Below are positions 13,670 to 55,195 of a stretch of 64,000 nucleotides of DNA, in pieces; positions within the stretch are counted from its first letter, which is position 1, and each line of letters opens with the position of its first letter. The translations under genes were made by a program, and so were the position numbers. The stretch lies in the IMG/VR virus record IMGVR_UViG_3300017963_000188, positions 62,001 to 126,000 of that record; one strand, 5' to 3'. A model generated the notes under the pieces. The model ran no database searches. It was not told the DNA's origin and saw only the letters and a list, made by a program, of their open reading frames with translations.

Positions 13670-14680
13670 ATGGGTAATGAAAAATACCAGGATGGAAGCA
13701 GCATCTGTGTTGTGGCAAAAGTACCTGAACATATCGCTTGTCAATTCCCAAAAGATGCTGATGAAGATGCTGATGATCCACATATCACAGTGCTTTATAT
13801 TGGTGATATGCCTAGAGAGAAGACAGGCACATTAATCAATACCTGCAAAAACATTTTTGGTCAGATACCATTTTTACGAGCAAGGTTAGATTCGAAGGTC
13901 TCATACTTTGACCCCTCAGATAGCTCAGAGGGTCGTAGAGTAGCTAAACTAGATGTTAAATGCCCTGACCTTCATTATTTCCACAAGCGTCTCTGGGACG
14001 AATTAGAAGGTGCTGGTGTGGATGTAGCTCATTCATTCCCTGAATACCATCCTCATGTCACTTTGGATTACATAGAACCAGACACTGAATATGAAGGTCC
14101 AGTACCTAATGGTGAATGGGATATTGATGGTATTGAGATTTGGGGGTGGGAAGATCATATCAGAATCCCGTTTATCAGCATTGAAATCATAGCTGATAAT
14201 GTTGTAGCTAGGGTCTTAGCAAACCGTGTAGTTTCTAGAGTTATGCAAGCACAATGGTCACGTCTAAAAAATCACTTCAATGTCAGAAACCCTCTGTTCC
14301 ATGCCACTACTGGACCCCGTGCTATGAAAGTCATTGAAGAAGGATTCAAATCAGATAGTGGATATTCTGATTACGGGATGGGAAATGTTTTGGGAGTCTC
14401 TTTCTCAAGAAGCCTCGAATATCTATTAGGAGGTCACTTCGGGAATGCTATCTTTGTGGTAGATAAAGATGAACTTGGGAGCAAGTTCAAAGTAGATCAT
14501 GTAGAGTCTTATCCAGAAGAACGAGAAGAGAGGGTAGTCACCAAACACCTTCCACCCAAATACATCAAGGGATTAATCTTCAATGGTAAGCTATTGAAAG
14601 GAGACTTCCCATACTTTTCATCACTACCTTTTCCAGTTGTGCATCGACCAAAAAGTGACTGGGTATTGATTGGAGAATGA
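13670..14680 (+). CDS. 2H phosphoesterase (Acb1-like) fused to ADP-ribosyltransferase-like domain
   Basis: HITV and HVTL motifs; C-terminal LFHAT...GVSFSRS...EREERV. Confidence 0.75.
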   Translation: MGNEKYQDGSSICVVAKVPEHIACQFPKDADEDADDPHITVLYIGDMPREKTGTLINTCKNIFGQIPFLRARLDSKVSYFDPSDSSEGRRVAKLDVKCPDLHYFHKRLWDELEGAGVDVAHSFPEYHPHVTLDYIEPDTEYEGPVPNGEWDIDGIEIWGWEDHIRIPFISIEIIADNVVARVLANRVVSRVMQAQWSRLKNHFNVRNPLFHATTGPRAMKVIEEGFKSDSGYSDYGMGNVLGVSFSRSLEYLLGGHFGNAIFVVDKDELGSKFKVDHVESYPEEREERVVTKHLPPKYIKGLIFNGKLLKGDFPYFSSLPFPVVHRPKSDWVLIGE

Positions 14681-17140: not shown

Positions 17141-17270
17141 CTTCCTCAGACATAGCTACAGTTTTGCCTGTTTTCAAATTTACATAATGAGAACCTATTA
17201 CGGACCATCCATCATCATCTATTTTATATTCTCCTTCAAGCATCTTGTTCTTTCCGATGTTGAAACACAA
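17052..17270 (-). CDS. small hypothetical protein
   Basis: 72-aa ORF between cca and methyltransferase; start uncertain. Confidence 0.4.
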   Translation of the reverse strand: MCFNIGKNKMLEGEYKIDDDGWSVIGSHYVNLKTGKTVAMSEEDEETDGDSQARQDLLPDDTCNSRREGGEL

Positions 17271-18594
17271 TCTGCATCAGAGCTTCCATGTTGTTGTCTT
17301 CTGGCACATCCAGGACATGCTCCATCAAAGCATTCAACACTACACCCACTTGAGGACCAGGCTTGACACCCAGAGCCTGCATCACATCATGCCCATCCAC
17401 AGCCAAGTTACGTGGACTATTGGGGGTGAAGTCTTTTTGCTCATCACATCGTTTCTTGAAGGTCACGAAATCTTCGTGGTCCTTCTCAGACATCCCAGCA
17501 GAACGACTCCCAGCTTTGTCTGCAAAGCTCAAGATGAAAAAGTCTTTCAGACGTTCTTTCCCAATCTTGTTGATAAACCTTCTCACACCAGGATCTTTCA
17601 TCCTCCTGTTGCTTTGATCTGCCATATGGTGAAACACCAAATGCTTTACGAATTCTCGTTCTTCATTGGAGAACTTCATTCGACGCATGAAGTCTTCAGT
17701 GATACGAGCTGATTCTTTTTGATGATCTATGAATGCAAATTCACCTCGACGTTCGTCAAATTCCCTGACCACAGGCTTTCCAATATCATGTAGGAAAGCA
17801 GCCAGACGGATCAAGGGCCTATCAGCAGGGACATTCTTGATCACTGCTACGGTATGTCCCCACACATCAAAGTCATGGTAATGGTTCTGCTTGCAATCAA
17901 ACATAGCCTCTGCTTCTGGGCAGAAGTGTTCAAACAGACCACAGATTCTCAACTGTCTTAGGCCAGTTTCCACATGTTCTGAAGACAGAATCTTCATGAA
18001 CTCATCCCTGATTCGTTCTGGTGATACCTTAGTCAAGACCTTTGAACAGTCCTTCATTGCTTGCAAAGTAAATGGTTCGATCTGAAATCCTAACCGAGAT
18101 GCAAATCTGATTGCTCTCATCACTCTCAGACCGTCTTCCAAAAACCGATCCTTAGCTTTCCCTACTGCTTGGATCAACCCTGCCTTCAGGTCTTTCTCTC
18201 CACCAAAAGGATCTACCAAGACATCATCAATAGGATCAAAAGCCATTGCATTGATAGTGAAGTCACGACGGCTCAGGTCCTCATTAATGTCACTGATAAA
18301 ATCCACAGAATCAGGACGACGACCATCACTGTAGTTTCCATCACCCCTTAGGGTAGTGGCTTCAAAACCCTCACCATCAATCATGACTGTAACGGTACCA
18401 TACTCGATTCCCGTGGGTACAACTTTGGGGAACATGGCTACTACTTGATCTGGAAGAGCAGAAGTACAGATGTCCCAGTCTTTTGGATCTAGACCTAGAA
18501 TTGCATCTCGAACAGACCCACCTACGATGTGGGCAGAGAAGCCTTTTTCCTTCAGGCTCTTGATGATTTCTACAACTGGCTCTGGAACTCTCAT
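17236..18594 (-). CDS. cca: CCA tRNA nucleotidyltransferase with HD domain
   Basis: VGGSVRD, DWD, DLSRRDFTINAMA, EDGLRVMRAIRF, FLHDIGK. Confidence 0.93.
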   Translation of the reverse strand: MRVPEPVVEIIKSLKEKGFSAHIVGGSVRDAILGLDPKDWDICTSALPDQVVAMFPKVVPTGIEYGTVTVMIDGEGFEATTLRGDGNYSDGRRPDSVDFISDINEDLSRRDFTINAMAFDPIDDVLVDPFGGEKDLKAGLIQAVGKAKDRFLEDGLRVMRAIRFASRLGFQIEPFTLQAMKDCSKVLTKVSPERIRDEFMKILSSEHVETGLRQLRICGLFEHFCPEAEAMFDCKQNHYHDFDVWGHTVAVIKNVPADRPLIRLAAFLHDIGKPVVREFDERRGEFAFIDHQKESARITEDFMRRMKFSNEEREFVKHLVFHHMADQSNRRMKDPGVRRFINKIGKERLKDFFILSFADKAGSRSAGMSEKDHEDFVTFKKRCDEQKDFTPNSPRNLAVDGHDVMQALGVKPGPQVGVVLNALMEHVLDVPEDNNMEALMQIVFQHRKEQDA

Positions 18595-21722: not shown

Positions 21723-21971
21723 CTACTCCTCATATTCAATTATTGGGAATTGTTTACCTGATATGGTTTCTTCTCTCCCACATTCTTCACATCTATGGGG
21801 GTATTTTATTGGGTAGGTAGGGTAATACGTGTCCATTGGTACCATCTCTCCACCACAGTCACAAAACAGTTTAGTCTCGAAAACTTTAACTTCTCTTTTG
21901 ACTTTTTTCATGGCTCCATCCGAATGACAAGATTTGAGGTAATACTCATCAATATTTCTATCATACCTCAT
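21723..21971 (-). CDS. zinc-ribbon hypothetical protein
   Basis: CDCGGEM...YPHRCEECG. Confidence 0.65.
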   Translation of the reverse strand: MRYDRNIDEYYLKSCHSDGAMKKVKREVKVFETKLFCDCGGEMVPMDTYYPTYPIKYPHRCEECGREETISGKQFPIIEYEE

Positions 21972-23049
21972 CCCACTTAATGGCCTGAATCACTACGTCA
22001 GGATAAAGTTCTCGACTCATGATTTCAATGCACATCTCATTGATTCGTTTTCTATTTGGCTCACGAGGCAATGAGGTTGTCTTCTTCAACTCCAAGAATA
22101 GACGTTCTTTTTCAAGAGCCCATTCTTCTAGCTGTTCAAATGACCAGGCCCCTTGACCAATAGTCATGAGTTCTTTTGCGTCAGGACGACGTACAATGAC
22201 CCCTTTACCAGTAAGGATTTCTTCACCCATCCTGATGAGCCTTACTAGATTTGTAGCGTGTTTACAATCATATCCAAACTTAGCTTCTAGTTCAGCTCGT
22301 TTTGGGTTCCTATTTTTCTTCCAGTTCTGGTAGCTATTCCACTCATTAATAGCATTCTGATATTGACGTTCCCTGGACATGGCCTCAATGAAGTTGTCAG
22401 AACAACCTGTTAGCTTCTGAATCTCAGCCCAGTTTTGTTCGTCCCCAGGATCAAAACTCTGCAAAAGACCAACTGTATTTACTTCTCGAAGTTCCTCCAG
22501 AGTCTCATCACTGAGTCTAGCTTCCTCAATAGATCCTTTCAGAATGTGGTTCAGCACATAGAAGAAAGCTCCCATATGGTCACGGCTCACAAGCTTGTGA
22601 GTCTCAGGAAGACCATAGGTTCCACGTTCTGGCTTTGTCTTTGGTGGGTTCAAAAGCCAGTTTCGGTGCCTTCTGATACGTTTAAGCTGTGAGAAGGCAT
22701 AGCCCAAATAGCTGCTACCCATCTTTGAGGAAAGGAACAAATCCCTGTGGTCTCTGATCAGCTTTCCTGTGTCTGTCATGGTCACGACATCAGAGTCTTC
22801 ACAGTACAGAATCTCAAAGCTAGAGGGGTTAGCTGCAAGAGCCATGTTACAGAATTTCTTCAGATCCCACAACACTCGGTCAGGTTCCTTGATTTCTTTC
22901 TGCTCAAATCTCTGGAGACATCCAAGATAATATTGAATTGGAGCCAGAGCAATACCCCTGAAATCCTCATCAGAGTCTGGTCTGCTGGTCCCATAAGCAT
23001 GGGACCCAAACCATGTTTCGTATATAATTTTCAAGTCTTTTAGATCCAT
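21961..23049 (-). CDS. Pol-beta superfamily nucleotidyltransferase (RlaP/YcgL-like)
   Basis: GSHAYGTSRPDSDEDFRG, YDCKHATNLVRL. Confidence 0.88.
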   Translation of the reverse strand: MDLKDLKIIYETWFGSHAYGTSRPDSDEDFRGIALAPIQYYLGCLQRFEQKEIKEPDRVLWDLKKFCNMALAANPSSFEILYCEDSDVVTMTDTGKLIRDHRDLFLSSKMGSSYLGYAFSQLKRIRRHRNWLLNPPKTKPERGTYGLPETHKLVSRDHMGAFFYVLNHILKGSIEEARLSDETLEELREVNTVGLLQSFDPGDEQNWAEIQKLTGCSDNFIEAMSRERQYQNAINEWNSYQNWKKNRNPKRAELEAKFGYDCKHATNLVRLIRMGEEILTGKGVIVRRPDAKELMTIGQGAWSFEQLEEWALEKERLFLELKKTTSLPREPNRKRINEMCIEIMSRELYPDVVIQAIKWDEV

Positions 23050-30240: not shown

Positions 30241-30326
30241 TGGTGGGTGAGGAGGGACTCGAACCCTCAAGCCCGAAGGCACAGGAACCTAAATCCTGCG
30301 TGTCTACCAAGTTCCACCACTCACCC
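30241..30326 (-). tRNA. trnL: tRNA-Leu(UAG)
   Basis: cloverleaf, loop TTTAGGT, long variable arm, CCA. Confidence 0.95.
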
Positions 30327-31494: not shown

Positions 31495-33450
31495 TTATTG
31501 ATCTAGAACAGACCTGATCTTTTTTGAGATTTCACTGAGACTGAAAGGCTTTTGAATAAATCCATCACAACCTTTTTCCAACACATATGAAGCTTTCCCA
31601 TTGATGTTGTATCCACTCATCAAGACAACTTTCACTTTTGGGTTTATCTTCTTCAGAGTGTCATATATCTCTGGACCCCCAATTCCTGGCAGCACCATAT
31701 CTAACAATATCAAGTCGATACTGTCTTGATGGTTCTTATAGAAATCAATAGCTTTTAAACCATCTTTTTCAGGATAAACCGTATATCCTATAGTACTGAG
31801 AAGTCTAGTAGCTGTTTTTATGATAATATCTTCATCATCTATCAACAATATACATTCTGATCCTATCTCTAACTGATCATCCTCTATTTTATTTTCAAAT
31901 AAGATCTCTTCAGCTCTGGGGAGATACACATTTACGGTAGTCCCTTCTCCTTCAACACTATGTAGAGAAATATCCCCCTCATGATTTTTGATGATACCAT
32001 ATGCTGAAGATAAGCCAAGACCAGAACCACGTCCTACTTCTTTGGTTGTGTAGAACGGATCAAAGGCTCGTTCTATTGTTTTATTACTCATCCCACACCC
32101 AGTATCTGTCACAGATAACTTGATATAATCACCAGGTTTTAAATGAAGAGATCCTATTTCAGATACTGATATATTTGAAGTAGTAATATAAAGATCACCT
32201 CCTGTTGGCATAGCTTGACTAGCATTGACAAACAGGTTCATAAGAACTTGTTCTATCTGGCCGGGATCTGCACTGACACTCCAAATATCACTCTTCAGAC
32301 TTTTATGCACAACAATATCTTTCCTAGTTCTGCTAAATATACCAATGCTATTGTTGACTAATACATTTATGTTTGAGGTTATGATATTTGAGGTGTCTAT
32401 GCCACGACGGGCAAAGCTAAGAAGTTGTGCAGTCAGATCAGCAGCTCTCTTACCACAAATCTCTATATCTATAAGTTCTTGGCTAGTCTTCCCTTCTTTC
32501 AAACGAAGTAAAGTAGCATTTGATAGTATACCCATCAAAAGGTTGTTGAAATCATGTGCTATTCCACCAGCCAAGGTTCCAATAGCTTCCATTTTCTGAG
32601 CATGGTAAAATTGAGTTTCAAGAGCTTTTCGATCTGTGATGTCCTCTCCATAACCAATACTATATTTTATATTACCCTCGTGATCATACAACACTGAATT
32701 GTGCCAAGCTATGAGTCTTTCTTCTCCAGTCTTTGTCAGTACAGGATTTTCATAGTATTCAGATAATTGTATTTCACCATTTATCAGATTATTAAAGACT
32801 TGTTTTACTTGAGGCACATATCTTTTTGGTAAGAAGTTTTCAAACCAGTTTTTACCAATTATATGCCTACAATCATCAGAATTATAACCTAATATCTGAC
32901 ATCCTTTCTTGTTTATAAGAGCAACATTTTGATTAGAATCAATTGTTACAAAAATCACATTAGCTACATTAAGGAACTCTTTCACTGTATTTTTTTCCAT
33001 CTTTAATTCTTTTTCTACTTCATATTGTTTAGTCACATCTACGATCTGTATTATTAGACCACCTTTAAAAAATGATGTGTGAAAAGAAGCTACTTTCTCA
33101 GCACCATCTTTACACGTTATTCTGAATACAGTGCAATCCTGTCCCTCACCCTTAAGAGCTTGTGTCACATTTTTCCAAACAAAATCTCTATATTCTCCAT
33201 CAGGATATAACCTTTCTACCCATTCTCCTACATTTTTGATTTCATCAGTAGTGTACCCAATGAATTTCTCTAGAGCTTTATTGAAAAGTACAATAGAACC
33301 ATCCGACCGTCCTATAGCCGTTGGTATTGGACTTTGAAGCACAATTAACGGAAAGCATAATTCAGAGTCTAGGATATCAACATCATATTCTGGAGATCCC
33401 CTAATATCTGCTAGAGCTTTCGCTTCTTTGTCCGACATTCCTTTGATCAT
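31495..33450 (-). CDS. PAS-PAS hybrid sensor histidine kinase/response regulator
   Basis: two PAS; AHDFNN H box, N/G1/F/G2 boxes; receiver LLIDDE...LLDMVLP...KPF. Confidence 0.95.
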   Translation of the reverse strand: MIKGMSDKEAKALADIRGSPEYDVDILDSELCFPLIVLQSPIPTAIGRSDGSIVLFNKALEKFIGYTTDEIKNVGEWVERLYPDGEYRDFVWKNVTQALKGEGQDCTVFRITCKDGAEKVASFHTSFFKGGLIIQIVDVTKQYEVEKELKMEKNTVKEFLNVANVIFVTIDSNQNVALINKKGCQILGYNSDDCRHIIGKNWFENFLPKRYVPQVKQVFNNLINGEIQLSEYYENPVLTKTGEERLIAWHNSVLYDHEGNIKYSIGYGEDITDRKALETQFYHAQKMEAIGTLAGGIAHDFNNLLMGILSNATLLRLKEGKTSQELIDIEICGKRAADLTAQLLSFARRGIDTSNIITSNINVLVNNSIGIFSRTRKDIVVHKSLKSDIWSVSADPGQIEQVLMNLFVNASQAMPTGGDLYITTSNISVSEIGSLHLKPGDYIKLSVTDTGCGMSNKTIERAFDPFYTTKEVGRGSGLGLSSAYGIIKNHEGDISLHSVEGEGTTVNVYLPRAEEILFENKIEDDQLEIGSECILLIDDEDIIIKTATRLLSTIGYTVYPEKDGLKAIDFYKNHQDSIDLILLDMVLPGIGGPEIYDTLKKINPKVKVVLMSGYNINGKASYVLEKGCDGFIQKPFSLSEISKKIRSVLDQ

Positions 33451-33514
33451 AAGAGCCCCTGATCTTTTTCGTACTATACAACTTATTTTTAGATTATATA
33501 ATAAAATAATTGAT

Positions 33515-33602
33515 TGGTGCCGGGGGAGGGAATCGAACCCTCACGAGATTTCTCTCATCGGATTTTGAATCCGACGTGTCTACCTAGTTCCACCACCCCG
33601 GC
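33515..33602 (-). tRNA. trnL: tRNA-Leu(CAA)
   Basis: stem TCGGA/TCCGA, loop TTCAAAA, CCA. Confidence 0.95.
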
Positions 33603-33606
33603 TATA

Positions 33607-33692
33607 TGGTGCTGGAGGAGGGATTTGAACCCTCAATCCCTTACGGGCATAGCGTCCTGAACGCTACGTGTATACCGTTCCACCACTCCAGC
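33607..33692 (-). tRNA. trnL: tRNA-Leu(CAG)
   Basis: loop TTCAGGA, CCA. Confidence 0.95.
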
Positions 33693-33700
33693 AAATTGTT

Positions 33701-33788
33701 TGGTGCCGGAAGAGGGAATCGAACCCCCACGGGACAAGTCCCACTAGGACCTAAACCTAGCGTGTCTGCCTAGTTCCACCATTCCGGC
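33701..33788 (-). tRNA. trnL: tRNA-Leu(UAG)
   Basis: loop TTTAGGT, CCA. Confidence 0.95.
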
Positions 33789-33789
33789 C

Positions 33790-33875
33790 TGGTGTCTGGG
33801 GAGGGGATCGAACCCTCAAGCCTTTCGGCACAGCGACCTCAACGCTGCGTGTCTACCTAATTTCACCACCCAGAC
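33790..33875 (-). tRNA. trnL: tRNA-Leu(GAG)
   Basis: loop TTGAGGT, CCA. Confidence 0.95.
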
Positions 33876-33877
33876 TT

Positions 33878-33962
33878 TGGTGCTCAGGGAGGGATTCGAA
33901 CCCTCAAGCCTTTCGGCACAGGATTCTTAGTCCTGCGTGTATACCAGTTCCACCACCCGAGC
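33878..33962 (-). tRNA. trnL: tRNA-Leu(AAG)
   Basis: stem CAGGA/TCCTG, loop CTAAGAA, CCA. Confidence 0.93.
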
Positions 33963-33969
33963 ATATTTT

Positions 33970-34056
33970 TGGTGCTGGGGGAGGGAATCGAACCCTCACG
34001 ACACAAGGCCAGGGGATTTTAAGTCCCCAGTGTCTACCTAATTCCACCACCCCAGC
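33970..34056 (-). tRNA. trnL: tRNA-Leu(UAA)
   Basis: loop CTTAAAA, CCA. Confidence 0.95.
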
Positions 34057-34076: not shown

Positions 34077-34244
34077 GATCAAACCTATCCCCTGCACACA
34101 GTACAGTAGTCTAGATCTGTACTGTGAGGATTATTAAATTACAAGAGTAACAGGGAAAGGGATAGATCGGTGGAAACGATTTCGGTTTTGGCAACGATGT
34201 CAATTCCCGTTTTCATCTCTCACCTCACCGTGTCGATTCACGGT
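34077..34244 (-). ncRNA. candidate structured leader/ncRNA upstream of Leu array
   Basis: nested stems 34085-91/34159-65 and 34097-106/34117-126; hairpin 34227-44; class-A-like promoter near 34250. Confidence 0.4.
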
Positions 34245-37815: not shown

Positions 37816-38538
37816 CTAAAATAGTTCCAGTTGCACTGGTATTCTAGGTTCCTTTCCTTTGATATATAATCTCTTATATCGACCAGAAGGAACCATCACA
37901 ATGTTGTCGATCACAATACCCTCTTGGATATATTTTGACAAACATAGACGTGCCGTACTGGTCGTTCTATAATGATGCTTGATATTATCTATAGCCTCTT
38001 TGAGATGGCAGCCTGGATGTAGGCTTACAAATCTAACAAGGTCTGAAACAGTTAATTGGAAGGGAGTAAAATACTTGTTCTGGTCATTACCTGCTTCTGC
38101 CCATGTCTTATGTTCTTCTCGTAAATTTTTCTTGAGCAACCAATGGACCTTTCTACGAAACTTTGGTTCCATAGATTCTATAACTTGATTATTTTTTCTA
38201 ACGTTTATTTCTATAAGTCCAATTCCAAAATGTTTACATAACGATGCTTCAAAGTCTCTTCGACCTGAGCTGTAAGACCTCCATTGGCCTTTTTTCTTTG
38301 GGACTGCTATTGAAACTCTATGGGCATATCTTGTCCAGAACATGGCTTGCTCAAGCACTTTGAGACTGAAACTGGTCTTCACCTCAATGACCCATAATAC
38401 AGGGTTCATCTTGGCTACAATGTCAGCTCTTGAACTGGTTCTGCTAGGATCAATCTCTACTTCTTGGTAAACTTCCCAATGGTGGTCCTGAAGCCAGTCC
38501 ACAACTGACTTTGCAATGTCAGATTCTTTTATTTTCAT
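37816..38538 (-). CDS. PD-(D/E)xK nuclease-like (MmcB-like) protein
   Basis: VYQEV...RADIVA...VIEVKTS. Confidence 0.7.
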   Translation of the reverse strand: MKIKESDIAKSVVDWLQDHHWEVYQEVEIDPSRTSSRADIVAKMNPVLWVIEVKTSFSLKVLEQAMFWTRYAHRVSIAVPKKKGQWRSYSSGRRDFEASLCKHFGIGLIEINVRKNNQVIESMEPKFRRKVHWLLKKNLREEHKTWAEAGNDQNKYFTPFQLTVSDLVRFVSLHPGCHLKEAIDNIKHHYRTTSTARLCLSKYIQEGIVIDNIVMVPSGRYKRLYIKGKEPRIPVQLELF

Positions 38539-39551
38539 TACTTGAGTTTGTTAGGAACGATCTGGGAATGCATCCAATGAGTAGAGGTTTGCACATGACC
38601 TTTTCTTACATATTTGGCAGTTGATTTTCTGAAATCCCGGTATCGAAATTCATCAACCACTCTGATTACATATCCTTCACATTCATCGTTGTCATAAGTT
38701 TCCTGGTACAAATTCTTAATGGTCTCTTCATCCCATATCCCTCTATAAAGAACCGGTACTGTTTCAAGACCTAAGAGTTGACACCATTCTACTGTGTCAT
38801 CCCAGGATAGGCAACGATTATTTTCATCCCAGATCGAGAATGTCATGAAATAACTGGGAAGATTCTCGTAGCTTATGGAATGAGCTGCATATAAATTCTC
38901 TCCACAAATTCTCCAATCTCTGGGGATCTCATAAGCCACTGAAGCATGGAGTGACTTCACCCAATGCCTCGATTCATGGTCCTTCGAGGTGATAGAACGA
39001 GCATGGATGTGACCTTGGTACATGGTAGTATTCTCACCATCCATCTTAATGGTCACTACAACTTCTTTACCTTCAAATTGGGAAGTATCCTGAAGGATCT
39101 TATCATCATCAGAAGCTCCAGGACTCCATGGTAAATGATAGGTCCTTGGATATTTATAGAACCCTATGAACGTGATCAGAGGATTTGCAGATCGAATCAT
39201 TTTCTCAGATTCAGAATATAATTCACCATGAAACCTGACCTTATGAGTCTTATCAGTACAGGGATTACCCCACTTGTCATACTCACCTTTTTTAAGATGA
39301 GGGGGTAGTAAGATAGTCTCGATACCAGCAGCTTCCCTAACCTCATTGGTGCTGACCGAAGTATCCTCAGCTTTGATGTGACAATCAGAACAAAGGGCAG
39401 CACCATTATCTAGATAGTATCCACCATCATCCCAAAGTTTACGTTCCATGATGTGGTGAGCATCTGAGGCAGGAGCCTGACAGATCACGCACTTGTGACC
39501 ATCTCGGTCCATTACGTTCTGTCTGAACTGGTCTCTAGTAAGCAGCATCAC
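38538..39551 (-). CDS. HNH domain fused to RNA ligase family domain
   Basis: RDGHKCVIC..DAHH..LCSDCH; KYPRTYHL, KMDGEN, GENL, EGYVIR, AKYVR. Confidence 0.85.
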   Translation of the reverse strand: MMLLTRDQFRQNVMDRDGHKCVICQAPASDAHHIMERKLWDDGGYYLDNGAALCSDCHIKAEDTSVSTNEVREAAGIETILLPPHLKKGEYDKWGNPCTDKTHKVRFHGELYSESEKMIRSANPLITFIGFYKYPRTYHLPWSPGASDDDKILQDTSQFEGKEVVVTIKMDGENTTMYQGHIHARSITSKDHESRHWVKSLHASVAYEIPRDWRICGENLYAAHSISYENLPSYFMTFSIWDENNRCLSWDDTVEWCQLLGLETVPVLYRGIWDEETIKNLYQETYDNDECEGYVIRVVDEFRYRDFRKSTAKYVRKGHVQTSTHWMHSQIVPNKLK

Positions 39552-40291: not shown

Positions 40292-40816
40292 ATGTCATAC
40301 CAAGATTCCAAAGCATGTGAGATGGTCGCAACCCACTGCTGCTGCTGCTCCCGTCCATTGGTCGATGCCAAGTCGGTTGAGATCGGTATTGGCCCTATCT
40401 GTCGTAGCAAGTACGGCTTCGATATCGATGTGGATGAAGAGAGTCGTGAGAAAGCTAACAAGCTGGTCTACAAGGTTGCCTGTGATCCTTCTCATCCCGA
40501 AGCTGTTGACCATTGCAAGGAACTCCATGACCTGGGATTCCATGTTCTGGCCAGCAAGGTCATGTCTGCTGTGGCTGCCATCCAGATTACCATGACCGAT
40601 GCAGAGCATCCTCACGGTCCTGGTCGTCTCTCGGTCAAGACCCCCTACAGCCCCGATGTGGTCGAAGCGATGCGTTGCATCCGTGGTCGTAGGTGGGACA
40701 AGGAAGGGAAGGTCAACACTTTCCCGATCAGCTCCAAGGCTGACCTGTGGAAGATGATGCAGACTTTTTACAAGGGTCGTGTTGTTGTGGGTCCGAAAGG
40801 CCCCTTCACTATCTGA
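40292..40816 (+). CDS. DUF6011-like zinc-binding protein with HARP-like C-terminus
   Basis: CCCSRPLVD.KS...GIGPIC; PYSPDVVEAMRCIRGRRWD. Confidence 0.65.
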   Translation: MSYQDSKACEMVATHCCCCSRPLVDAKSVEIGIGPICRSKYGFDIDVDEESREKANKLVYKVACDPSHPEAVDHCKELHDLGFHVLASKVMSAVAAIQITMTDAEHPHGPGRLSVKTPYSPDVVEAMRCIRGRRWDKEGKVNTFPISSKADLWKMMQTFYKGRVVVGPKGPFTI

Positions 40817-40858
40817 GTAGTATAACTGTAGGAGTGGTAACAACCATAGGAGAACGTT

Positions 40859-41665
40859 ATGGCTACCAATCACGAGGCAATCGTCAAGCGGACCAACCTG
40901 TACTACATTGATCCCCAACAGATCAAGGTGATTGAGGGGTGGAACAAGCGAAAGGACTTTGGAGATCTGGAGGCTCTCTGTCAGTCCATCATCAATCACC
41001 CTGGGGTCAAGGTCCCTCTCCGAGTCAAGAAGGATTCCGAGGGGAACATCACCCTGATCGATGGTGAGCGTAGGCTCAAAGCCACCATGATGGCTATTGA
41101 GCGTGGTCACGATATCAAGGCTGTTCCTGCCATCATTGAGGATCGGAAGATGTCTCAGGTCGAGATGATGTACCTCCAGATCCTGGCCAATGACGGTAAG
41201 AATTTCGATCCGGTGGAAGAGGCTCATGCCTTCAATCAGCTCCTTCAGTGGGGCTCCACCATCGACGAGATTGCCACGAAGCTGGGCAAATCTTCGGTCC
41301 ATGTCAGGGAACGTCTGGTCCTGATCAATGCTGTCCCTGAGGTTCAGAAGGCTGTTGCTGATCAGACCATTCCCATCGGTGAGGGTAAGCGAATCGTGAA
41401 GGAATCCGATGGTGATGTGGAGAAGCAGCGTCAGGCTCTCAAGGCTGAGGTGAGCAAGCGAGCTACCAAGAAGGCCAACAAGGAAGCTGGGGTGAAGACG
41501 GAAAAGACCCCAGACTTGGAGCGTGTCCTGAAGGTCTTGAAGATTGAGATGAAGAAGGGCACTCCCAAGGAAGATCAGATGGTCTTTGCCTCTGAGATTC
41601 GTGGTATCGTTTCCATGGTCATGGAAAACATCGAGACTATGGGAAATCTCAAGCCCACCAAGTAG
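40859..41665 (+). CDS. ParB/Spo0J-like protein
   Basis: PLRV...LIDGERRLKA; FDPVEEAHAF..L; EIATKLGKS HTH. Confidence 0.88.
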   Translation: MATNHEAIVKRTNLYYIDPQQIKVIEGWNKRKDFGDLEALCQSIINHPGVKVPLRVKKDSEGNITLIDGERRLKATMMAIERGHDIKAVPAIIEDRKMSQVEMMYLQILANDGKNFDPVEEAHAFNQLLQWGSTIDEIATKLGKSSVHVRERLVLINAVPEVQKAVADQTIPIGEGKRIVKESDGDVEKQRQALKAEVSKRATKKANKEAGVKTEKTPDLERVLKVLKIEMKKGTPKEDQMVFASEIRGIVSMVMENIETMGNLKPTK

Positions 41666-41671
41666 TTCTTC

Positions 41672-41699
41672 AAAAATCTGAAAACCCTCAGTATATAAT
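41672..41699 (+). promoter_or_regulatory. class A promoter cassette
   Basis: AAAAATCTG-N8-CAGTATATAAT-AGGAGGTG. Confidence 0.7.
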
Positions 41700-41714
41700 C
41701 TTAGGAGGTGCTCC

Positions 41715-42017
41715 ATGAAAGTCACCACTGAGAAAGGTCATCCAGCTCTTATCGATGGAGCTGTCAGAATCACTTTCAAAGACCATACCGGCAAGACCAT
41801 GACCTGGCTTGCCAAAAAGATTGGTACATGCACCTGGAAGAGACTTGATCTAGAAGGTGGTTGGTGGCAAAAAAGCACCACCGAGAATGGCACTGAAATT
41901 GTAAAGGAAGAGGTGCTTGTAGCCAATCCTGACGAATTTCTCAAACACATCTTGATGCGAATGAATCTTCATTATGGTAAATATGAACCCATCACAGGCG
42001 AAGAAAAGGAGCGTTAA
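41715..42017 (+). CDS. hypothetical protein
   Basis: 100 aa, cassette upstream. Confidence 0.7.
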   Translation: MKVTTEKGHPALIDGAVRITFKDHTGKTMTWLAKKIGTCTWKRLDLEGGWWQKSTTENGTEIVKEEVLVANPDEFLKHILMRMNLHYGKYEPITGEEKER

Positions 42018-42021
42018 ATGT

Positions 42022-42099
42022 GGCAAAGAATCCGGCAAAGAATCCGGCAACCATTGCCGGATTCTGGGGATAAGTAAAATATTGAAATGTATCCGGCAA
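42022..42099. repeat. ATCCGGCAA direct and inverted repeat cluster
   Basis: copies at 42030, 42042, 42091 (+) and 42054..42062 (reverse complement). Confidence 0.85.
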
Positions 42100-42109
42100 G
42101 GAGATTAAG

Positions 42110-42349
42110 ATGAAATGTAAATTTTGTGGTGGCACTGCTGGGTCATTGATTGATGGGGCTCATGCTTTGTGTGCGGCTCGTAAGGAACGTAACCTTCCAA
42201 CACCATGTCTAGGATATCGATGTCAGACCTGTAATGGGCATGGTCGAATCCCCAAGACCAAATATGGACCAATAAATCCAAACCAAGCAGCTATTGATGC
42301 CTGGGCTCCACCATGTCCTGATTGTGATGGGAAGGGACATACTTTCTGA
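42110..42349 (+). CDS. Cys-rich small protein
   Basis: 79 aa; DnaJ-like CxxCxGxG repeats. Confidence 0.65.
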   Translation: MKCKFCGGTAGSLIDGAHALCAARKERNLPTPCLGYRCQTCNGHGRIPKTKYGPINPNQAAIDAWAPPCPDCDGKGHTF

Positions 42350-42388
42350 ACCTTTAAATATTTCCTGCATTTTTTCATTTTTTAATTT

Positions 42389-42416
42389 AAAAATCTGAAA
42401 AGTATCAGTATAGAAT
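42389..42416 (+). promoter_or_regulatory. class A promoter cassette
   Basis: AAAAATCTG-N8-CAGTATAGAAT-AGGAGGTG. Confidence 0.7.
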
Positions 42417-42432
42417 AGTAGGAGGTGACGAT

Positions 42433-43005
42433 ATGATGAAAGGCTGCCGACCACTCAATGAGCAAGAAGTAGAAAAAATCATCAGTTTCTTCAGCAAGAA
42501 CCGCTATGGGCTTCGTGACATTGCCTTGGTTCTGTTGGGACTTTACACTGGTCGTCGTATCAGCCAACTTCTGTCCGTCAAGGTTGAGGATGTCTACAAC
42601 TCCAAGACCGATAAGGTAAACGACCGTCTCTGGTTTGCTCGTCAACATGTCAAGGGTAAACGTGAAGGTGAGGTCGTGATACTTCATCCCAAAGTCAAGA
42701 CTGCCATCAAGACTTGGGTGGAGGCTATGCCTACTTCTGACTTCTTGTTCTGTTCCCAGAAAGGTGGGGCTATCTCTCGGATGCAAGCTCATCGAATCCT
42801 CAAAGAGGCTGTAGAAGTCTTAAACCTAGAAGGCAAGGTTGCCACTCATAGCATGAGGAAAACCTTTGCCAAGAAGATGTACGGTGCCCTGGACAATGAT
42901 ATCTATCGTCTCCAAAGGGCTATGGGTCACACTGATATCAAGACCACTGTGAAGTACCTGAGCTTCCAGCAGGAAGATATCGATGATGCTATCCTGGGGA
43001 TGTAA
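42433..43005 (+). CDS. tyrosine recombinase, catalytic domain only
   Basis: GRRISQLL (R), HSMRKTF (HxxR), MGH, TVKYL (Y); 190 aa. Confidence 0.92.
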   Translation: MMKGCRPLNEQEVEKIISFFSKNRYGLRDIALVLLGLYTGRRISQLLSVKVEDVYNSKTDKVNDRLWFARQHVKGKREGEVVILHPKVKTAIKTWVEAMPTSDFLFCSQKGGAISRMQAHRILKEAVEVLNLEGKVATHSMRKTFAKKMYGALDNDIYRLQRAMGHTDIKTTVKYLSFQQEDIDDAILGM

Positions 43006-43006
43006 G

Positions 43007-43381
43007 ATGAAGATTGGAATACAGCAAGCCTCAAAGCTCCAACAGAACATGTCAGCTACACACCATCTTGATCGTTGTATTCACTGCGGTAAGCCAGAAG
43101 GTGATATACGATATCACCAAGATGGAGAATGTGGTAGTTACCAAAGAATATTTATAAAAACCGGAACCACTTTTGAAAACGCTACCTCTCTACAGAGATT
43201 GAAAGAGATAGAACATACTATCCCTTACATGGAGCATGAACTAACCTATGGGTGGGGCTCTCAAGAAGAGCTTGATGAGGCTCGTAAAGAAGCTGCTGAG
43301 TTGAGAAAAAAATTAGGTTTGGGATGGTATGGCTATGAACCTATTGATCAATCCGAGCCAGAATCCGATCCACAACATTAG
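43007..43381 (+). CDS. hypothetical protein
   Basis: ATG right after recombinase stop. Confidence 0.6.
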   Translation: MKIGIQQASKLQQNMSATHHLDRCIHCGKPEGDIRYHQDGECGSYQRIFIKTGTTFENATSLQRLKEIEHTIPYMEHELTYGWGSQEELDEARKEAAELRKKLGLGWYGYEPIDQSEPESDPQH

Positions 43382-49532: not shown

Positions 49533-49710
49533 GTTGTGCCTTTCTATATTCTATATATTCAGGTCTTTCTAGGTGACCTTCTTTACATTTGCAGTCTGTT
49601 ATATGCAAACCACATCTATAACAACAACGATGCTTCTCACAGTATCCATGTGTTACGGTCATAACACCATGAAAGGTAACAGCATCTTTGTCACATTTTT
49701 CACATTTCAT
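49477..49710 (-). CDS. Cys-rich small protein
   Basis: 77 aa, ATGA-coupled. Confidence 0.55.
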   Translation of the reverse strand: MKCEKCDKDAVTFHGVMTVTHGYCEKHRCCYRCGLHITDCKCKEGHLERPEYIEYRKAQHGYQDQTKDWENGKISSW

Positions 49711-50318
49711 TTCAAAGCCTCGAACATTTTCTGATCATCTCCACAATGCTCTTTGAGCCGTTGCATCCAAGCATCAGTCTTGATTTTGAACATATGGGGA
49801 GGATAACCTTTCTTTAGAGGGGCTCCTTTACATACCACTCCTTCAGCACTTATTCCTTCGAGAGTCCCATCTCTTACCATTTGTATGAAGATGTCATTGA
49901 TGTTACCTCGATACAGCAACGGTGCTATCTCTACTCCTTCTGTAAGGTCAAGAAAATCTCGTGGTCCAAGAATACCTTTGCGATGCACATTGATGTCAAA
50001 CAAAAGAACATCATGACATTCTTCTTGGTGGAAACCAGCAAAAGAATTAGGACCAAAGAATTCAAAAAAACAAATGACACGTTCTAACCGTTTCTTCTTG
50101 AACCGATCTGTAATGGGACCTTCATATTTGGATTTCACAAGATCTTCAGCCTCAGCTAAAACTCCTTGATCAGTTCCGAGGAGTCGTTTACGAGAACCAA
50201 ATTTATAGAAACCACGCTTACGATTCCATTCAGCTCTGATATTAGACCCATCAATCTTATTGAAGGCATAATAAGAACCATTAAGAATGTCTCGTGATAT
50301 GGTAGGATACTGTTTCAT
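49707..50318 (-). CDS. RNA ligase-like (Rnl2-type nucleotidyltransferase domain)
   Basis: KIDGSN, FEFFG, LFDI, EGVVCK, FKIKT. Confidence 0.78.
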   Translation of the reverse strand: MKQYPTISRDILNGSYYAFNKIDGSNIRAEWNRKRGFYKFGSRKRLLGTDQGVLAEAEDLVKSKYEGPITDRFKKKRLERVICFFEFFGPNSFAGFHQEECHDVLLFDINVHRKGILGPRDFLDLTEGVEIAPLLYRGNINDIFIQMVRDGTLEGISAEGVVCKGAPLKKGYPPHMFKIKTDAWMQRLKEHCGDDQKMFEALK

Positions 50319-53482: not shown

Positions 53483-53569
53483 TGGCAGAGGGGAGGGGAC
53501 TCGAACCCCTAAGGCTTTTACACCCACCCGATTAGCAGTCGGGCCTCTTACCAATTAGAGTACCCCTCT
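53483..53569 (-). tRNA. trnS: tRNA-Ser(GCU)
   Basis: loop CTGCTAA, A1:U72, CCA. Confidence 0.95.
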
Positions 53570-53580
53570 GTAAAAATTAT

Positions 53581-53671
53581 TGGCAGAGGGGGTGGGATTC
53601 GAACCCACGGGGGCTTTGACACCCCACCGGTTTTCAAGACCGGCACCATAGACCAGCTCGGACACCCCTCT
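53581..53671 (-). tRNA. trnS: tRNA-Ser(UGA)
   Basis: loop CTTGAAA, A1:U72, CCA. Confidence 0.95.
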
Positions 53672-53691
53672 GTATTTAACAACCTCCTTAT

Positions 53692-53766
53692 TGGCAGGGG
53701 TGCTGGGATTCGAACCCAGAGTCCAGGTTTTGGAGACCTGTGGTTTAGCCATTAACCGACACCCCT
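53692..53766 (-). tRNA. trnW: tRNA-Trp(CCA)
   Basis: loop CTCCAAA, CCA end. Confidence 0.95.
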
Positions 53767-53772
53767 GTATTT

Positions 53773-53848
53773 TGGTGGGTCCAGAGGGATTTGAACCCCC
53801 GACCTTCTGATTAAGAATCAGCAGCTCTACCAACTGAGCTATGGACCC
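53773..53848 (-). tRNA. trnK: tRNA-Lys(CUU)
   Basis: loop TTCTTAA, CCA. Confidence 0.93.
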
Positions 53849-53860
53849 TTCATTGCTCCT

Positions 53861-53937
53861 TGGTGGGATGGGAGGGACTTGAACCCCCGACGCTTGGAAC
53901 TTCAACCCAACGCTCTACCAATCTGAGCTACCATCCC
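53861..53937 (-). tRNA. trnF: tRNA-Phe(GAA)
   Basis: loop TTGAAGT, CCA. Confidence 0.93.
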
Positions 53938-53942
53938 ACAAA

Positions 53943-54029
53943 TGGTGGGCCGGGGAGGATTTGAACCTCCGTAGCCTTGCAGCGGCAGATTTACAGTCTG
54001 CTCCCTTTGACCAACTCGGGCACCGACCC
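53943..54029 (-). tRNA. trnY: tRNA-Tyr(GUA)
   Basis: loop CTGTAAA, long variable arm, CCA. Confidence 0.95.
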
Positions 54030-54037
54030 ATAATTTT

Positions 54038-54114
54038 TGGCGAGCCAGGTGGGACTCGAACCCACAACACTCGGATTAAAAGTCCGATACGCTACCAAAT
54101 TGCGTCACTGGCTC
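54038..54114 (-). tRNA. trnK: tRNA-Lys(UUU)
   Basis: loop CTTTTAA, G73, CCA. Confidence 0.95.
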
Positions 54115-54146
54115 ACTATTTAATGCCTCCTATCGAGACTTATCAT

Positions 54147-54221
54147 TGGCGGGAACGGAGGGATTCGAACCCCCAACCTAGCGGTTAACAGCCGCTAGCT
54201 CTACCATTGAGCTACGTTCCC
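54147..54221 (-). tRNA. trnN: tRNA-Asn(GUU)
   Basis: loop CTGTTAA, CCA. Confidence 0.95.
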
Positions 54222-54228
54222 AGTTATT

Positions 54229-54316
54229 TGGTGGGCAGGGAAGGATTCGAACCTCCGTACCCCCGAAGGGGATCGGGTCTACAGCCCGACGCCATTAACC
54301 ACTCGGCCACCTGCCC
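54229..54316 (-). tRNA. trnY: tRNA-Tyr(GUA), second copy
   Basis: loop CTGTAGA, long variable arm, CCA. Confidence 0.93.

Positions 54317-55119: not shown

Positions 55120-55195
<76 letters not shown>

What the first reader, a model, noticed from the sequence alone, without database searches (positions are those of the whole stretch)
33878..33962. tRNA-Leu(AAG): an A34 anticodon that is rare in bacteria
Loop CTAAGAA in an intact cloverleaf. Established: most bacteria have A34 only in tRNA-Arg(ACG), edited to inosine by TadA; Leu(AAG) is known from few lineages. CTT codons look common in this genome by eye. Either A34 is unmodified or a broadened deaminase exists; none is seen in this window.
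Basis: partly seen in the sequence, partly recalled or inferred. Interest (0 to 1): 0.7.

Follow-up and report, generated by a model that had tools for sequence, protein, structure and literature searches.

The report
Jumbo-phage tRNA-Leu with AAG anticodon
The A-starting leucine tRNA is real, but it belongs to a 358-kb phage that carries 49 tRNA genes, where it most likely supplies extra decoding of the phage's favourite leucine codon CUU; similar genes occur in at least 117 other viral contigs.

Summary
An intact class II tRNA-Leu with anticodon AAG and loop CUAAGAA lies at window 33878-33962 on the minus strand. Assembled contigs from two public runs match it with no differences.

The context is not a bacterium. 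The window is part of a 358,038-bp jumbo phage with 49 tRNA genes and a tmRNA. The gene is second in a tightly packed six-gene Leu array (UAA, AAG, GAG, UAG, CAG, CAA). All six possible Leu anticodons are therefore present.

The phage encodes no TadA. Its only CDA-fold deaminase is a ComEB-like dCMP deaminase. CTT is the top Leu codon, at 24% of Leu and 20 per 1000 codons.

The nearest known phage (TerL 47% identical) has the Leu array without AAG. Pattern scans of IMG/VR found tRNA-Leu(AAG) in at least 117 viral contigs, mostly in tRNA arrays and usually instead of GAG. These contigs are low in GC and rich in CTT. None of 50 checked carries a TadA.

Best reading: a phage-supplied CUU decoder charged by host LeuRS. 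Whether A34 stays unmodified (favoured) or is deaminated by a host TadA is unresolved, because no RNA run was listed. It is a new member of a known kind, of moderate interest.

The parts
33878..33962 (-). tRNA-Leu(AAG), 85 nt. The anticodon is at window 33926-33928 (CTT on the + strand). Loop CUAAGAA, A73, CCA encoded.
   Evidence: ARAGORN; Rfam 56.2 bits; cloverleaf fold; public contigs show no differences
33970..34056 (-). tRNA-Leu(UAA), first gene of the array, 7 nt upstream of the AAG gene
33790..33875 (-). tRNA-Leu(GAG), 2 nt downstream of the AAG gene. Its variable arm and T stem are identical to those of AAG. Loop UUGAGGU.
33701..33788 (-). tRNA-Leu(UAG), copy a
33607..33692 (-). tRNA-Leu(CAG)
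33515..33602 (-). tRNA-Leu(CAA), last gene of the array
30241..30326 (-). tRNA-Leu(UAG), copy b, solitary. Its anticodon stem (GCAGGA/UCCUGU) is identical to that of the AAG tRNA.
34097..34126 (.). Perfect 10-bp inverted repeat with a 10-nt spacer, 40 nt upstream of the array and unique in the window. It may be a regulatory or processing hairpin; function unknown.
17236..18594 (-). Phage CCA-adding enzyme (PolyA_pol head, RNA-binding, HD and tRNA_NucTran2_2 domains). Part of the tRNA maintenance context.
38538..39551 (-). HNH plus RNA ligase. Part of a tRNA repair context, together with RlaP (21961-23049), a second RNA ligase (49707-50318) and a LigT-like protein (13670-14680).

Best explanation
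This is a functional tRNA-Leu isoacceptor encoded by a jumbo phage. It is co-transcribed with five other Leu tRNAs from a tightly packed array with 1-8 nt spacers. It is matured by host RNase P and 3' trimming. Host LeuRS charges it; LeuRS does not read the anticodon and relies on A73 and the class II tRNA architecture (established knowledge).

Its job is to add decoding capacity for CUU. CUU is the phage's most used Leu codon and is especially favoured over CUC in the tail and baseplate gene block. With AAG added to GAG, UAG, CAG, UAA and CAA, every Leu codon has a Watson-Crick-matched phage tRNA.

The gene most likely arose inside this phage lineage's own Leu-tRNA family. Its variable arm and T stem match the neighbouring GAG gene, and its anticodon stem matches the second UAG gene. 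It then kept evolving under structural constraint.

Because the phage has no TadA, the state of A34 depends on the host. I favour unmodified A34 pairing with U3 (about 0.5) over conversion to I34 by a host TadA that tolerates A35 (about 0.35).

Shown here: the gene, its intactness, the array, the phage context, the lack of a phage TadA, the codon usage, and the recurrence in other phages. Inferred: expression, charging, CUU-decoding benefit, local origin and modification state.
For: - The gene is real and intact and the base is confirmed in public contigs.
- The context is a phage: a 358,038-bp virus record with 49 tRNAs, a tmRNA, a TerL, tail-fibre hits and CheckV 100%.
- The six-gene array holds all six Leu anticodons, and CCA is encoded in all 49 tRNAs.
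- The stems differ from those of GAG only by compensated changes. The acceptor is GCUCGGG/CCUGAGC against GUCUGGG/CCCAGAC, and the anticodon stem is CAGGA/UCCUG against CAGCG/CGCUG. Structure has therefore been preserved through about 20% divergence.
- CTT makes up 24% of Leu codons. CTT/(CTT+CTC) is 0.80 in the 232-310 kb tail and baseplate block, against 0.54-0.60 in three of the other four blocks.
- Across IMG/VR, loci with Leu(AAG) have a median GC of 36.6% and CTT/(CTT+CTC) of 0.80. Loci with Leu(GAG) have 48.1% and 0.54 (Mann-Whitney p 1e-14 and 1e-10). This phage, at 40.6% and 0.66, is intermediate and carries both genes.
- The phage has no TadA, and none was found in 50 other AAG-bearing viral records.
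- E. coli TadA does not deaminate a tRNA-Leu(AAG) (PMC11472039).
- Engineered four-fold-box ANN tRNAs stay unmodified and are neutral or beneficial in E. coli (bioRxiv 10.64898/2026.05.15.725136).
- In 201 genomes sampled from the order that holds the closest homologues of the adjacent kinase, the AAG pattern was found in none, while Leu(GAG) was found in 4 of 5.
- Local origin: among 563 Leu tRNAs, the best match to this phage's GAG tRNA is its own AAG tRNA.
Against: - There are no expression or modification data: no RNA run was listed.
- The host is unknown. The Desulfobacterales hint rests on one kinase at 36-48% identity.
- The loop CUAAGAA equals the phage's two Arg(ACG) loops (CUACGAA) except at position 35. 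It fits the S. pyogenes TadA consensus YUAMGRA (PMC11472039). All other CUN-reading Leu tRNAs of this phage have U32 and G37. This argues for I34 rather than unmodified A34.
- U-ending codons are also the top codons in the Ala, Gly, Thr, Ser and Pro boxes, yet none of these has an ANN tRNA. Codon usage alone therefore does not explain why only Leu has one.
- The survey loci are not phylogenetically independent, because several near-identical arrays come from one metagenome.
- The donor paralogue is not resolved: some unrelated phage tRNAs are as similar as the phage's own paralogues.
Confidence: 0.55

Rival explanations
1. The tRNA is deaminated to tRNA-Leu(IAG) by the host's TadA, as in Streptococcus, Lactococcus and Oenococcus. 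It then reads CUU, CUC and CUA.
For: - The loop CUAAGAA differs from the phage's own two Arg(ACG) loops (CUACGAA) only at position 35 and fits the relaxed TadA consensus YUAMGRA (PMC11472039).
- It is the only CUN-reading Leu tRNA of this phage with C32, A37 and A38.
- 73 of 107 unique phage Leu(AAG) loops are CUAAGRA, like the phage Arg(ACG) loops. Phage GAG loops are mostly UUGAGGK.
- The phage also carries Arg(ACG), so it already depends on the host TadA.
- In most phages AAG stands in place of GAG, as in Lactobacillales.
Against: - E. coli TadA rejects Leu(AAG), and acceptance needed an adapted enzyme in S. pyogenes (PMC11472039).
- Neither this phage nor 50 other AAG-bearing viral records encode a TadA.
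- In this phage GAG and two UAG genes are retained next to AAG, which I34 would make largely redundant.
- The candidate host order shows no Leu(AAG) in the 201 genomes searched.
- The C32/A38 loop context is shared by phage Leu(UAG) tRNAs, so it is not specific to A34.
Confidence: 0.35
2. It is a selectively neutral or decaying duplicate: a redundant Leu gene that happened to fix a change to A at position 34 and contributes nothing.
For: - The phage already has GAG, which reads CUU by wobble, plus two UAG genes.
- The nearest relative does without AAG.
- Engineered four-fold-box ANN tRNAs are often neutral in E. coli (bioRxiv 10.64898/2026.05.15.725136).
Against: - All four stems are fully paired despite about 20% divergence from the paralogues, with compensatory changes.
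- The conserved tertiary positions, A73 and CCA are intact.
- The same anticodon recurs in at least 117 viral contigs and tracks CTT-rich codon usage.
Confidence: 0.08
3. It is an escape variant against a host anticodon nuclease. An A34 and A37 loop would make a Leu tRNA that a nuclease aimed at host Leu tRNAs cannot recognise, which would keep translation running during defence.
For: - The tRNA zone carries a repair suite: a CCA-adding enzyme, two RNA ligases, RlaP and a LigT-like protein. This suggests that tRNA damage is a selective pressure.
- Phage tRNAs with altered anticodon loops that evade tRNA-targeting defences have been described (own knowledge, not checked here).
Against: - No Leu-specific nuclease or host is known for this phage.
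- The association with low GC and CTT-rich usage is what codon supply predicts. Nuclease escape does not predict it.
- The other Leu isoacceptors keep ordinary loops.
Confidence: 0.05
4. It is an assembly or sequencing artefact, and the true base is G.
For: None was found.
Against: - Contigs from two runs match with 0 differences across the gene.
- The gene differs from the GAG neighbour at many positions, not only at position 34.
Confidence: 0.01

Closest known systems
tRNA-Leu(AAG), read as IAG, of Lactobacillales (Streptococcus, Lactococcus, Lactobacillus, Leuconostoc, Oenococcus)
   Same: It is a class II tRNA-Leu with A34 and anticodon AAG, and is associated with raised CUU usage (PMC13249217). 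The loop fits YUAMGRA (PMC11472039).
   Different: - In those bacteria AAG replaces GAG, and no family has both (PMC13249217). Here both sit side by side.
- There a cognate relaxed TadA is present and I34 has been demonstrated. Here the carrier is a phage with no TadA, and the modification state is unknown.
- The S. pyogenes tRNA differs from tRNA-Arg(ACG) at positions 35 and 37, whereas this one has A37 like tRNA-Arg(ACG) (PMC11472039).
tRNA arrays of huge phages, for example uncultured phage LR745208.1 (485 kb)
   Same: It is the closest TerL relative, at 47% identity. It has 36 tRNA hits grouped by amino acid, including a five-gene Leu array and a four-gene Ser array.
   Different: Its Leu array is CAG, GAG, UAG, CAA, UAA, with no AAG. 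Its Leu tRNAs are much more diverged from those of this phage than this phage's Leu tRNAs are from one another.
Other IMG/VR viral contigs with tRNA-Leu(AAG), at least 117 of them (for example L072, a 395-kb complete phage with GAG and AAG)
   Same: These are phage-array Leu(AAG) genes, often with the CUAAGAA or CUAAGGA loop, in low-GC, CTT-rich genomes with no TadA.
   Different: - 112 of 117 have AAG without GAG in the fetched locus.
- Five of these records were searched, including L072 and those with the most similar AAG tRNAs; none has a TerL relative of this phage.
Streptomyces tRNA-Asp(AUC), and the unmodified A34 tRNA-Thr(AGU) of Mycoplasma
   Same: These are precedents for an A34 tRNA that reads a U-ending codon by Watson-Crick pairing and so avoids inefficient G:U wobble (PMC9262613 abstract; the Mycoplasma case is cited in bioRxiv 10.64898/2026.05.15.725136).
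   Different: They involve other amino acids and are cellular, not viral. Whether A34 is unmodified here was not tested.

Membership tests
Bacterial-type class II tRNA-Leu | Cloverleaf with a 7-bp acceptor stem, a long variable arm, conserved U8, A14, G18G19 and the T-loop GTTCRA, and an NAG or YAA anticodon | tested here: met
   ARAGORN; Rfam 56.2 bits against a gathering score of 29; the fold; invariant columns in the alignment of seven Leu tRNAs
Bacterial-type class II tRNA-Leu | Discriminator A73, the main LeuRS identity element in E. coli (established knowledge) | tested here: met
   The 3' end reads ...GAGC-A-CCA
TadA-dependent I34 tRNA (like tRNA-Arg ICG and Lactobacillales tRNA-Leu IAG) | A34 within a loop that fits the TadA consensus (YUACGAA strict; YUAMGRA relaxed) | tested here: inconclusive
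   The loop CUAAGAA fits the relaxed consensus but fails the strict one at position 35 (PMC11472039)
TadA-dependent I34 tRNA (like tRNA-Arg ICG and Lactobacillales tRNA-Leu IAG) | A cognate tRNA adenosine deaminase in the same genome | tested here: not met
   The only deaminase-fold ORF is ComEB-like (128.7 bits to TIGR02571; top PDB hits are dCMP deaminases). The TadA model scores 14.7 bits against a cut-off of 150. The host genome is unknown.
TadA-dependent I34 tRNA (like tRNA-Arg ICG and Lactobacillales tRNA-Leu IAG) | A-to-G signal at position 34 in RNA | not testable with these tools
   No RNA run was listed for the array
TadA-dependent I34 tRNA (like tRNA-Arg ICG and Lactobacillales tRNA-Leu IAG) | AAG replaces GAG in the tRNA set | tested here: not met
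   GAG lies 2 nt downstream of AAG
Phage tRNA array that supplements codon supply | Lies in a phage genome among clustered tRNA genes | tested here: met
   Virus record with TerL and tail genes and 49 tRNAs, 48 of them at 92-150 kb on one strand
Phage tRNA array that supplements codon supply | The cognate codon is frequent in phage genes | tested here: met
   CTT is the top Leu codon and is enriched over CTC in the tail and baseplate block. Across phages, AAG tracks CTT-rich usage.
Phage tRNA array that supplements codon supply | The codon is used more in the phage than in the host, or the host tRNA is scarce | not testable with these tools
   The host is not identified. There is only a weak Desulfobacterales hint.
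Phage tRNA that evades anticodon nucleases | The loop differs from the host target so that it resists a defined host nuclease | not testable with these tools
   No host or nuclease is known. Only the repair-gene context was seen.

The most novel reading that the evidence does not exclude
Phage-borne tRNA-Leu(AAG) genes, including this one, work with an unmodified A34 in hosts whose TadA is Arg-specific. They would then be a widespread natural class of unmodified A34 tRNAs, selected in low-GC phages to read CUU by Watson-Crick pairing. This would contradict the view that non-ACG ANN tRNAs are absent from bacteriophages and barely tolerated in nature.
Probability: 0.4. Interest if true: 0.7.

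Novelty: new member of a known kind. Interest (0 to 1): 0.42.

Why it matters
A34 tRNAs other than Arg(ACG) are among the rarest tRNA species in bacteria. A 2026 preprint (10.64898/2026.05.15.725136) states that they are absent from bacteriophages.

This phage, and at least 117 other viral contigs, carry tRNA-Leu(AAG) without any deaminase of their own. That gives a natural test of whether an unmodified A34 can serve in translation, or whether many host TadA enzymes are less strict than that of E. coli.

It also shows a phage that encodes a Watson-Crick-matched tRNA for every leucine codon. This is relevant to how jumbo phages make translation independent of the host. For annotation, the practical point is that the gene is a real isoacceptor, not an error.

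Tried and rejected
- Searching IMG/VR with the ORF upstream of the array gave one distant locus (29% identity) with no tRNAs.
- An exact search for the AAG anticodon arm in IMG/VR gave nothing.
- Two IMG/VR contigs with a 100% identical TerL do not contain the Leu array, so they gave no independent check of the base.
- Megablast of two AAG-bearing arrays against cultured phages gave only stray single-tRNA hits, so no cultured host could be tied to phage Leu(AAG).
- A loop-masked nearest-neighbour analysis did not reveal a distinct AAG lineage and could not decide between GAG and UAG as the donor. In other phages that hold both genes, AAG is sometimes closer to UAG or CAG than to GAG.
- My first idea, that the C32/A37/A38 loop marks adaptation to TadA, was weakened because phage Leu(UAG) tRNAs commonly have the same loop context.
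The unbiased UAA-anchored sample gave 2 AAG against 1 GAG, which is too few.
- The sequencing-run search was busy twice, and no RNA run was listed.
- Sigma-70 promoter and terminator scans around the array were at chance level.

Full report
**1. The observation**

ARAGORN finds 28 tRNA genes in the window, all on the minus strand. One of them is tRNA-Leu(aag) at 33878-33962. Rfam's tRNA model scores it 56.2 bits, with E 2e-9.

The 85-nt transcript folds into a cloverleaf with a 7-bp acceptor stem, a 3-bp D stem, a long variable arm (GCC-GAAA-GGC) and a T arm. The energy is -33.3 kcal/mol and the z-score is -2.75. The anticodon loop is CUAAGAA, the discriminator is A73 and CCA is encoded. A34 is the complement of the T at window 33928.

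Logan contigs from two public runs cover 33300-34038 without a single difference. One run is a sediment metagenome of 2018 and the other is a seawater metagenome of 2021. They may be the source samples, and their contig sets look alike, so I do not count them as fully independent. A miscalled base is nevertheless very unlikely. The gene differs from its GAG neighbour at about 20% of positions, not just at position 34.

**2. The context**

The window is bases 62,001-126,000 of a single 358,038-bp IMG/VR virus record. CheckV rates it 100% complete, and its GC content is 40.6%. The genome has:
- a large terminase subunit, tail-fibre, baseplate-like and RNR genes;
- 49 tRNA genes and a tmRNA with tag ANDNALPMAA.

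All tRNA genes but one lie at 92-150 kb on the minus strand, and all 49 encode CCA.

The AAG gene is the second of six Leu genes. Their transcription order is UAA, AAG, GAG, UAG, CAG, CAA, and the spacers between them are 7, 2, 1, 8 and 4 nt. A further UAG copy lies 3.2 kb downstream. All six possible Leu anticodons are therefore present, one Watson-Crick partner per Leu codon.

Around the arrays lie tRNA maintenance genes: a CCA-adding enzyme, RlaP, two RNA ligases and a LigT-like protein.

**3. Deaminase search**

Six-frame HMM searches of the whole genome used PF00383, PF14437 and the TadA model NF008113. All three hit the same single ORF, at genome 331,492-331,947.
- It scores 128.7 bits to ComEB, and its best PDB relatives are dCMP deaminases.
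- The TadA model gives only 14.7-26 bits, against a cut-off of 150.

The phage therefore has no recognisable tRNA adenosine deaminase. Any I34, including in its two tRNA-Arg(ACG), must come from the host enzyme.

**4. Codon usage**

The count covers about 92,600 codons of ORFs of at least 120 aa. CTT is the most used Leu codon at 24% of Leu, or 20.0 per 1000 codons. CTC, CTA and CTG each make up 12-13%.

CTT/(CTT+CTC) is 0.80 in the 232-310 kb block, which holds tail and baseplate-like genes. It is 0.54-0.60 in three of the other four blocks and 0.70 in the 150-232 kb block.

**5. Relatives**

The closest phage by TerL (47% identity) is the 485-kb uncultured phage LR745208.1. It has 36 tRNA hits arranged by amino acid. 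Its Leu array is CAG, GAG, UAG, CAA, UAA, with no AAG.

This phage's AAG tRNA is closer to its own GAG copy (80%) and second UAG copy (78%) than to any LR745208.1 Leu tRNA. It shares an identical variable arm and T stem with GAG, and an identical anticodon stem with the second UAG copy. Among 563 Leu tRNAs compared with the loop masked, the best match to this phage's GAG tRNA is its own AAG tRNA.

I conclude, with moderate confidence, that AAG arose within this lineage's Leu family. Stem differences from the paralogues are compensated, which argues for continued selection on structure.

**6. Rarity in phages**

I ran a pattern for class II Leu tRNAs with anticodon AAG against IMG/VR. ARAGORN confirmed tRNA-Leu(AAG) in 117 of them, and 93 of those lie in arrays of five or more tRNAs.

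| Anchor of the scan | AAG only | GAG only | Both |
|---|---|---|---|
| AAG | 112 | 0 | 5 |
| GAG | 0 | 110 | 2 |
| UAA, unbiased sample of 119 loci | 2 | 1 | 0 |

The UAA-anchored sample also held 23 Leu(UAG) genes. Leu(AAG) is thus uncommon per phage, but recurrent and about as frequent as GAG. Holding both genes, as this phage does, is the minority state.

| Loci | Median GC | CTT/(CTT+CTC) |
|---|---|---|
| AAG-bearing | 36.6% | 0.80 |
| GAG-bearing | 48.1% | 0.54 |
| This phage | 40.6% | 0.66 |

The AAG and GAG sets differ with Mann-Whitney p of 1e-14 for GC content and 1e-10 for the CTT ratio. The loci are not phylogenetically independent, so these p-values overstate the support.

Other non-ACG ANN anticodons are nearly absent from the same arrays. 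None of 50 AAG-bearing viral records, 19 of them at least 90% complete, has a TadA-grade match; the best score is 30 bits.

**7. A34 or I34?**

From the literature:
- In Lactobacillales, tRNA-Leu(AAG) replaces GAG and is fully converted to I34 by TadA (PMC13249217; PMC11472039).
- S. pyogenes TadA accepts it, but E. coli TadA does not.
- The mRNA editing motifs are YUAMGRA for S. pyogenes and YUACGAA for E. coli (PMC11472039).
- Engineered four-fold-box ANN tRNAs in E. coli remain unmodified and are neutral or beneficial (bioRxiv 10.64898/2026.05.15.725136).

Evidence for I34 here: the loop CUAAGAA equals the phage's Arg(ACG) loops except at position 35. It is also unlike the loops of the other CUN-reading Leu tRNAs of this phage, which are UUNAGGU or UUNAGGA.

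Evidence against I34:
- Strict TadA enzymes require C35.
- The phage retains GAG and two UAG genes beside AAG.
- There is a weak host hint. The adjacent hybrid histidine kinase has its best homologues (36-48% identity) in Desulfobacterales and Syntrophales MAGs. Four of five such genomes have Leu(GAG) and none has AAG. None of 201 genomes sampled from that order matches the AAG pattern.
- The C32/A38 context also occurs in phage Leu(UAG) tRNAs, so it is not diagnostic.

No RNA run was listed. I put unmodified A34 at about 0.5 and I34 at about 0.35, with the remainder on a neutral duplicate or another role.

**8. Verdict**

This is a real phage-encoded tRNA-Leu(AAG). It is an extra isoacceptor that completes a full Watson-Crick set for leucine in a jumbo phage with CTT-biased usage.

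It is a new member of a known kind, bringing together A34 Leu tRNAs and phage tRNA arrays. One point goes beyond routine: Leu(AAG) genes recur in phages that lack any TadA, contrary to a recent statement that such tRNAs are absent from phages. This makes the question of unmodified A34 directly testable.

Noticed in passing
whole genome (G000), including the window: CpG is strongly depleted (observed/expected 0.40). CGCG occurs 0 times and GCGC only 17 times in 358 kb, and the codons CGC, GCG, CCG and TCG are very rare. This looks like avoidance of restriction sites or of CpG-targeting defence.
   Followed up: partly
G000 140146-140222, outside the window; the Arg(ACG) genes are at G000 147686-147761 and 327248-327324: The phage has tRNA-Arg(UCG), which to my own knowledge is rare in bacteria, plus two Arg(ACG) genes and no Arg(CCG). 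The CGC codon is almost unused, at 0.8 per 1000. The Arg set could therefore work even without I34. Arg(UCG) is also common in other phage arrays.
   Followed up: partly
window 31495-33450 (-): A hybrid sensor kinase (two or more PAS domains, HisKA, HATPase and a receiver domain) is encoded directly downstream of the Leu array. This is unusual cargo for a phage. Its best homologues are in Desulfobacterales and Syntrophales MAGs at 36-48% identity, which gives a weak hint to the host.
   Followed up: partly
window 13670-14680 (+), 17236-18594 (-), 21961-23049 (-), 38538-39551 (-), 49707-50318 (-): A set of tRNA maintenance and repair genes is interspersed with the tRNA arrays: a LigT-like 2',5' RNA ligase or phosphoesterase, a CCA-adding enzyme, RlaP, an HNH-RNA ligase fusion and a second RNA ligase.
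   Followed up: no
window about 40292-43381 (+): A block on the opposite strand, with higher GC (45.5% against about 40%), encodes a DUF6011 protein, a ParB-like protein and a short (190-aa) tyrosine recombinase. It may be an inserted mobile element.
   Followed up: no
window 34097-34126: A perfect 10-bp inverted repeat (CACAGTACAG, 10-nt spacer, CTGTACTGTG) lies 40 nt upstream of the first Leu tRNA. It is unique in the window, and none is expected by chance.
   Followed up: partly
L047:369-445, L053:3716-3790, L053:3882-3956, L335:5860-5932 (IMG/VR loci): Some phage arrays hold 73-77-nt tRNAs with Leu anticodons (AAG, UAA, CAA) but no long variable arm. Their amino-acid identity is unclear.
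   Followed up: no
G000 144255-144611 (-), outside the window: A phage-encoded one-piece tmRNA with tag peptide ANDNALPMAA lies among the tRNA genes.
   Followed up: no
window 53483-54316 (-): A second dense array holds Ser, Ser, Trp, Lys, Phe, Tyr, Lys, Asn and Tyr genes. Tyr(GUA) is duplicated within it, and a second Phe(GAA) copy lies just downstream at window 55120-55195. One Phe copy has an unusual loop, UUGAAGU.
   Followed up: no
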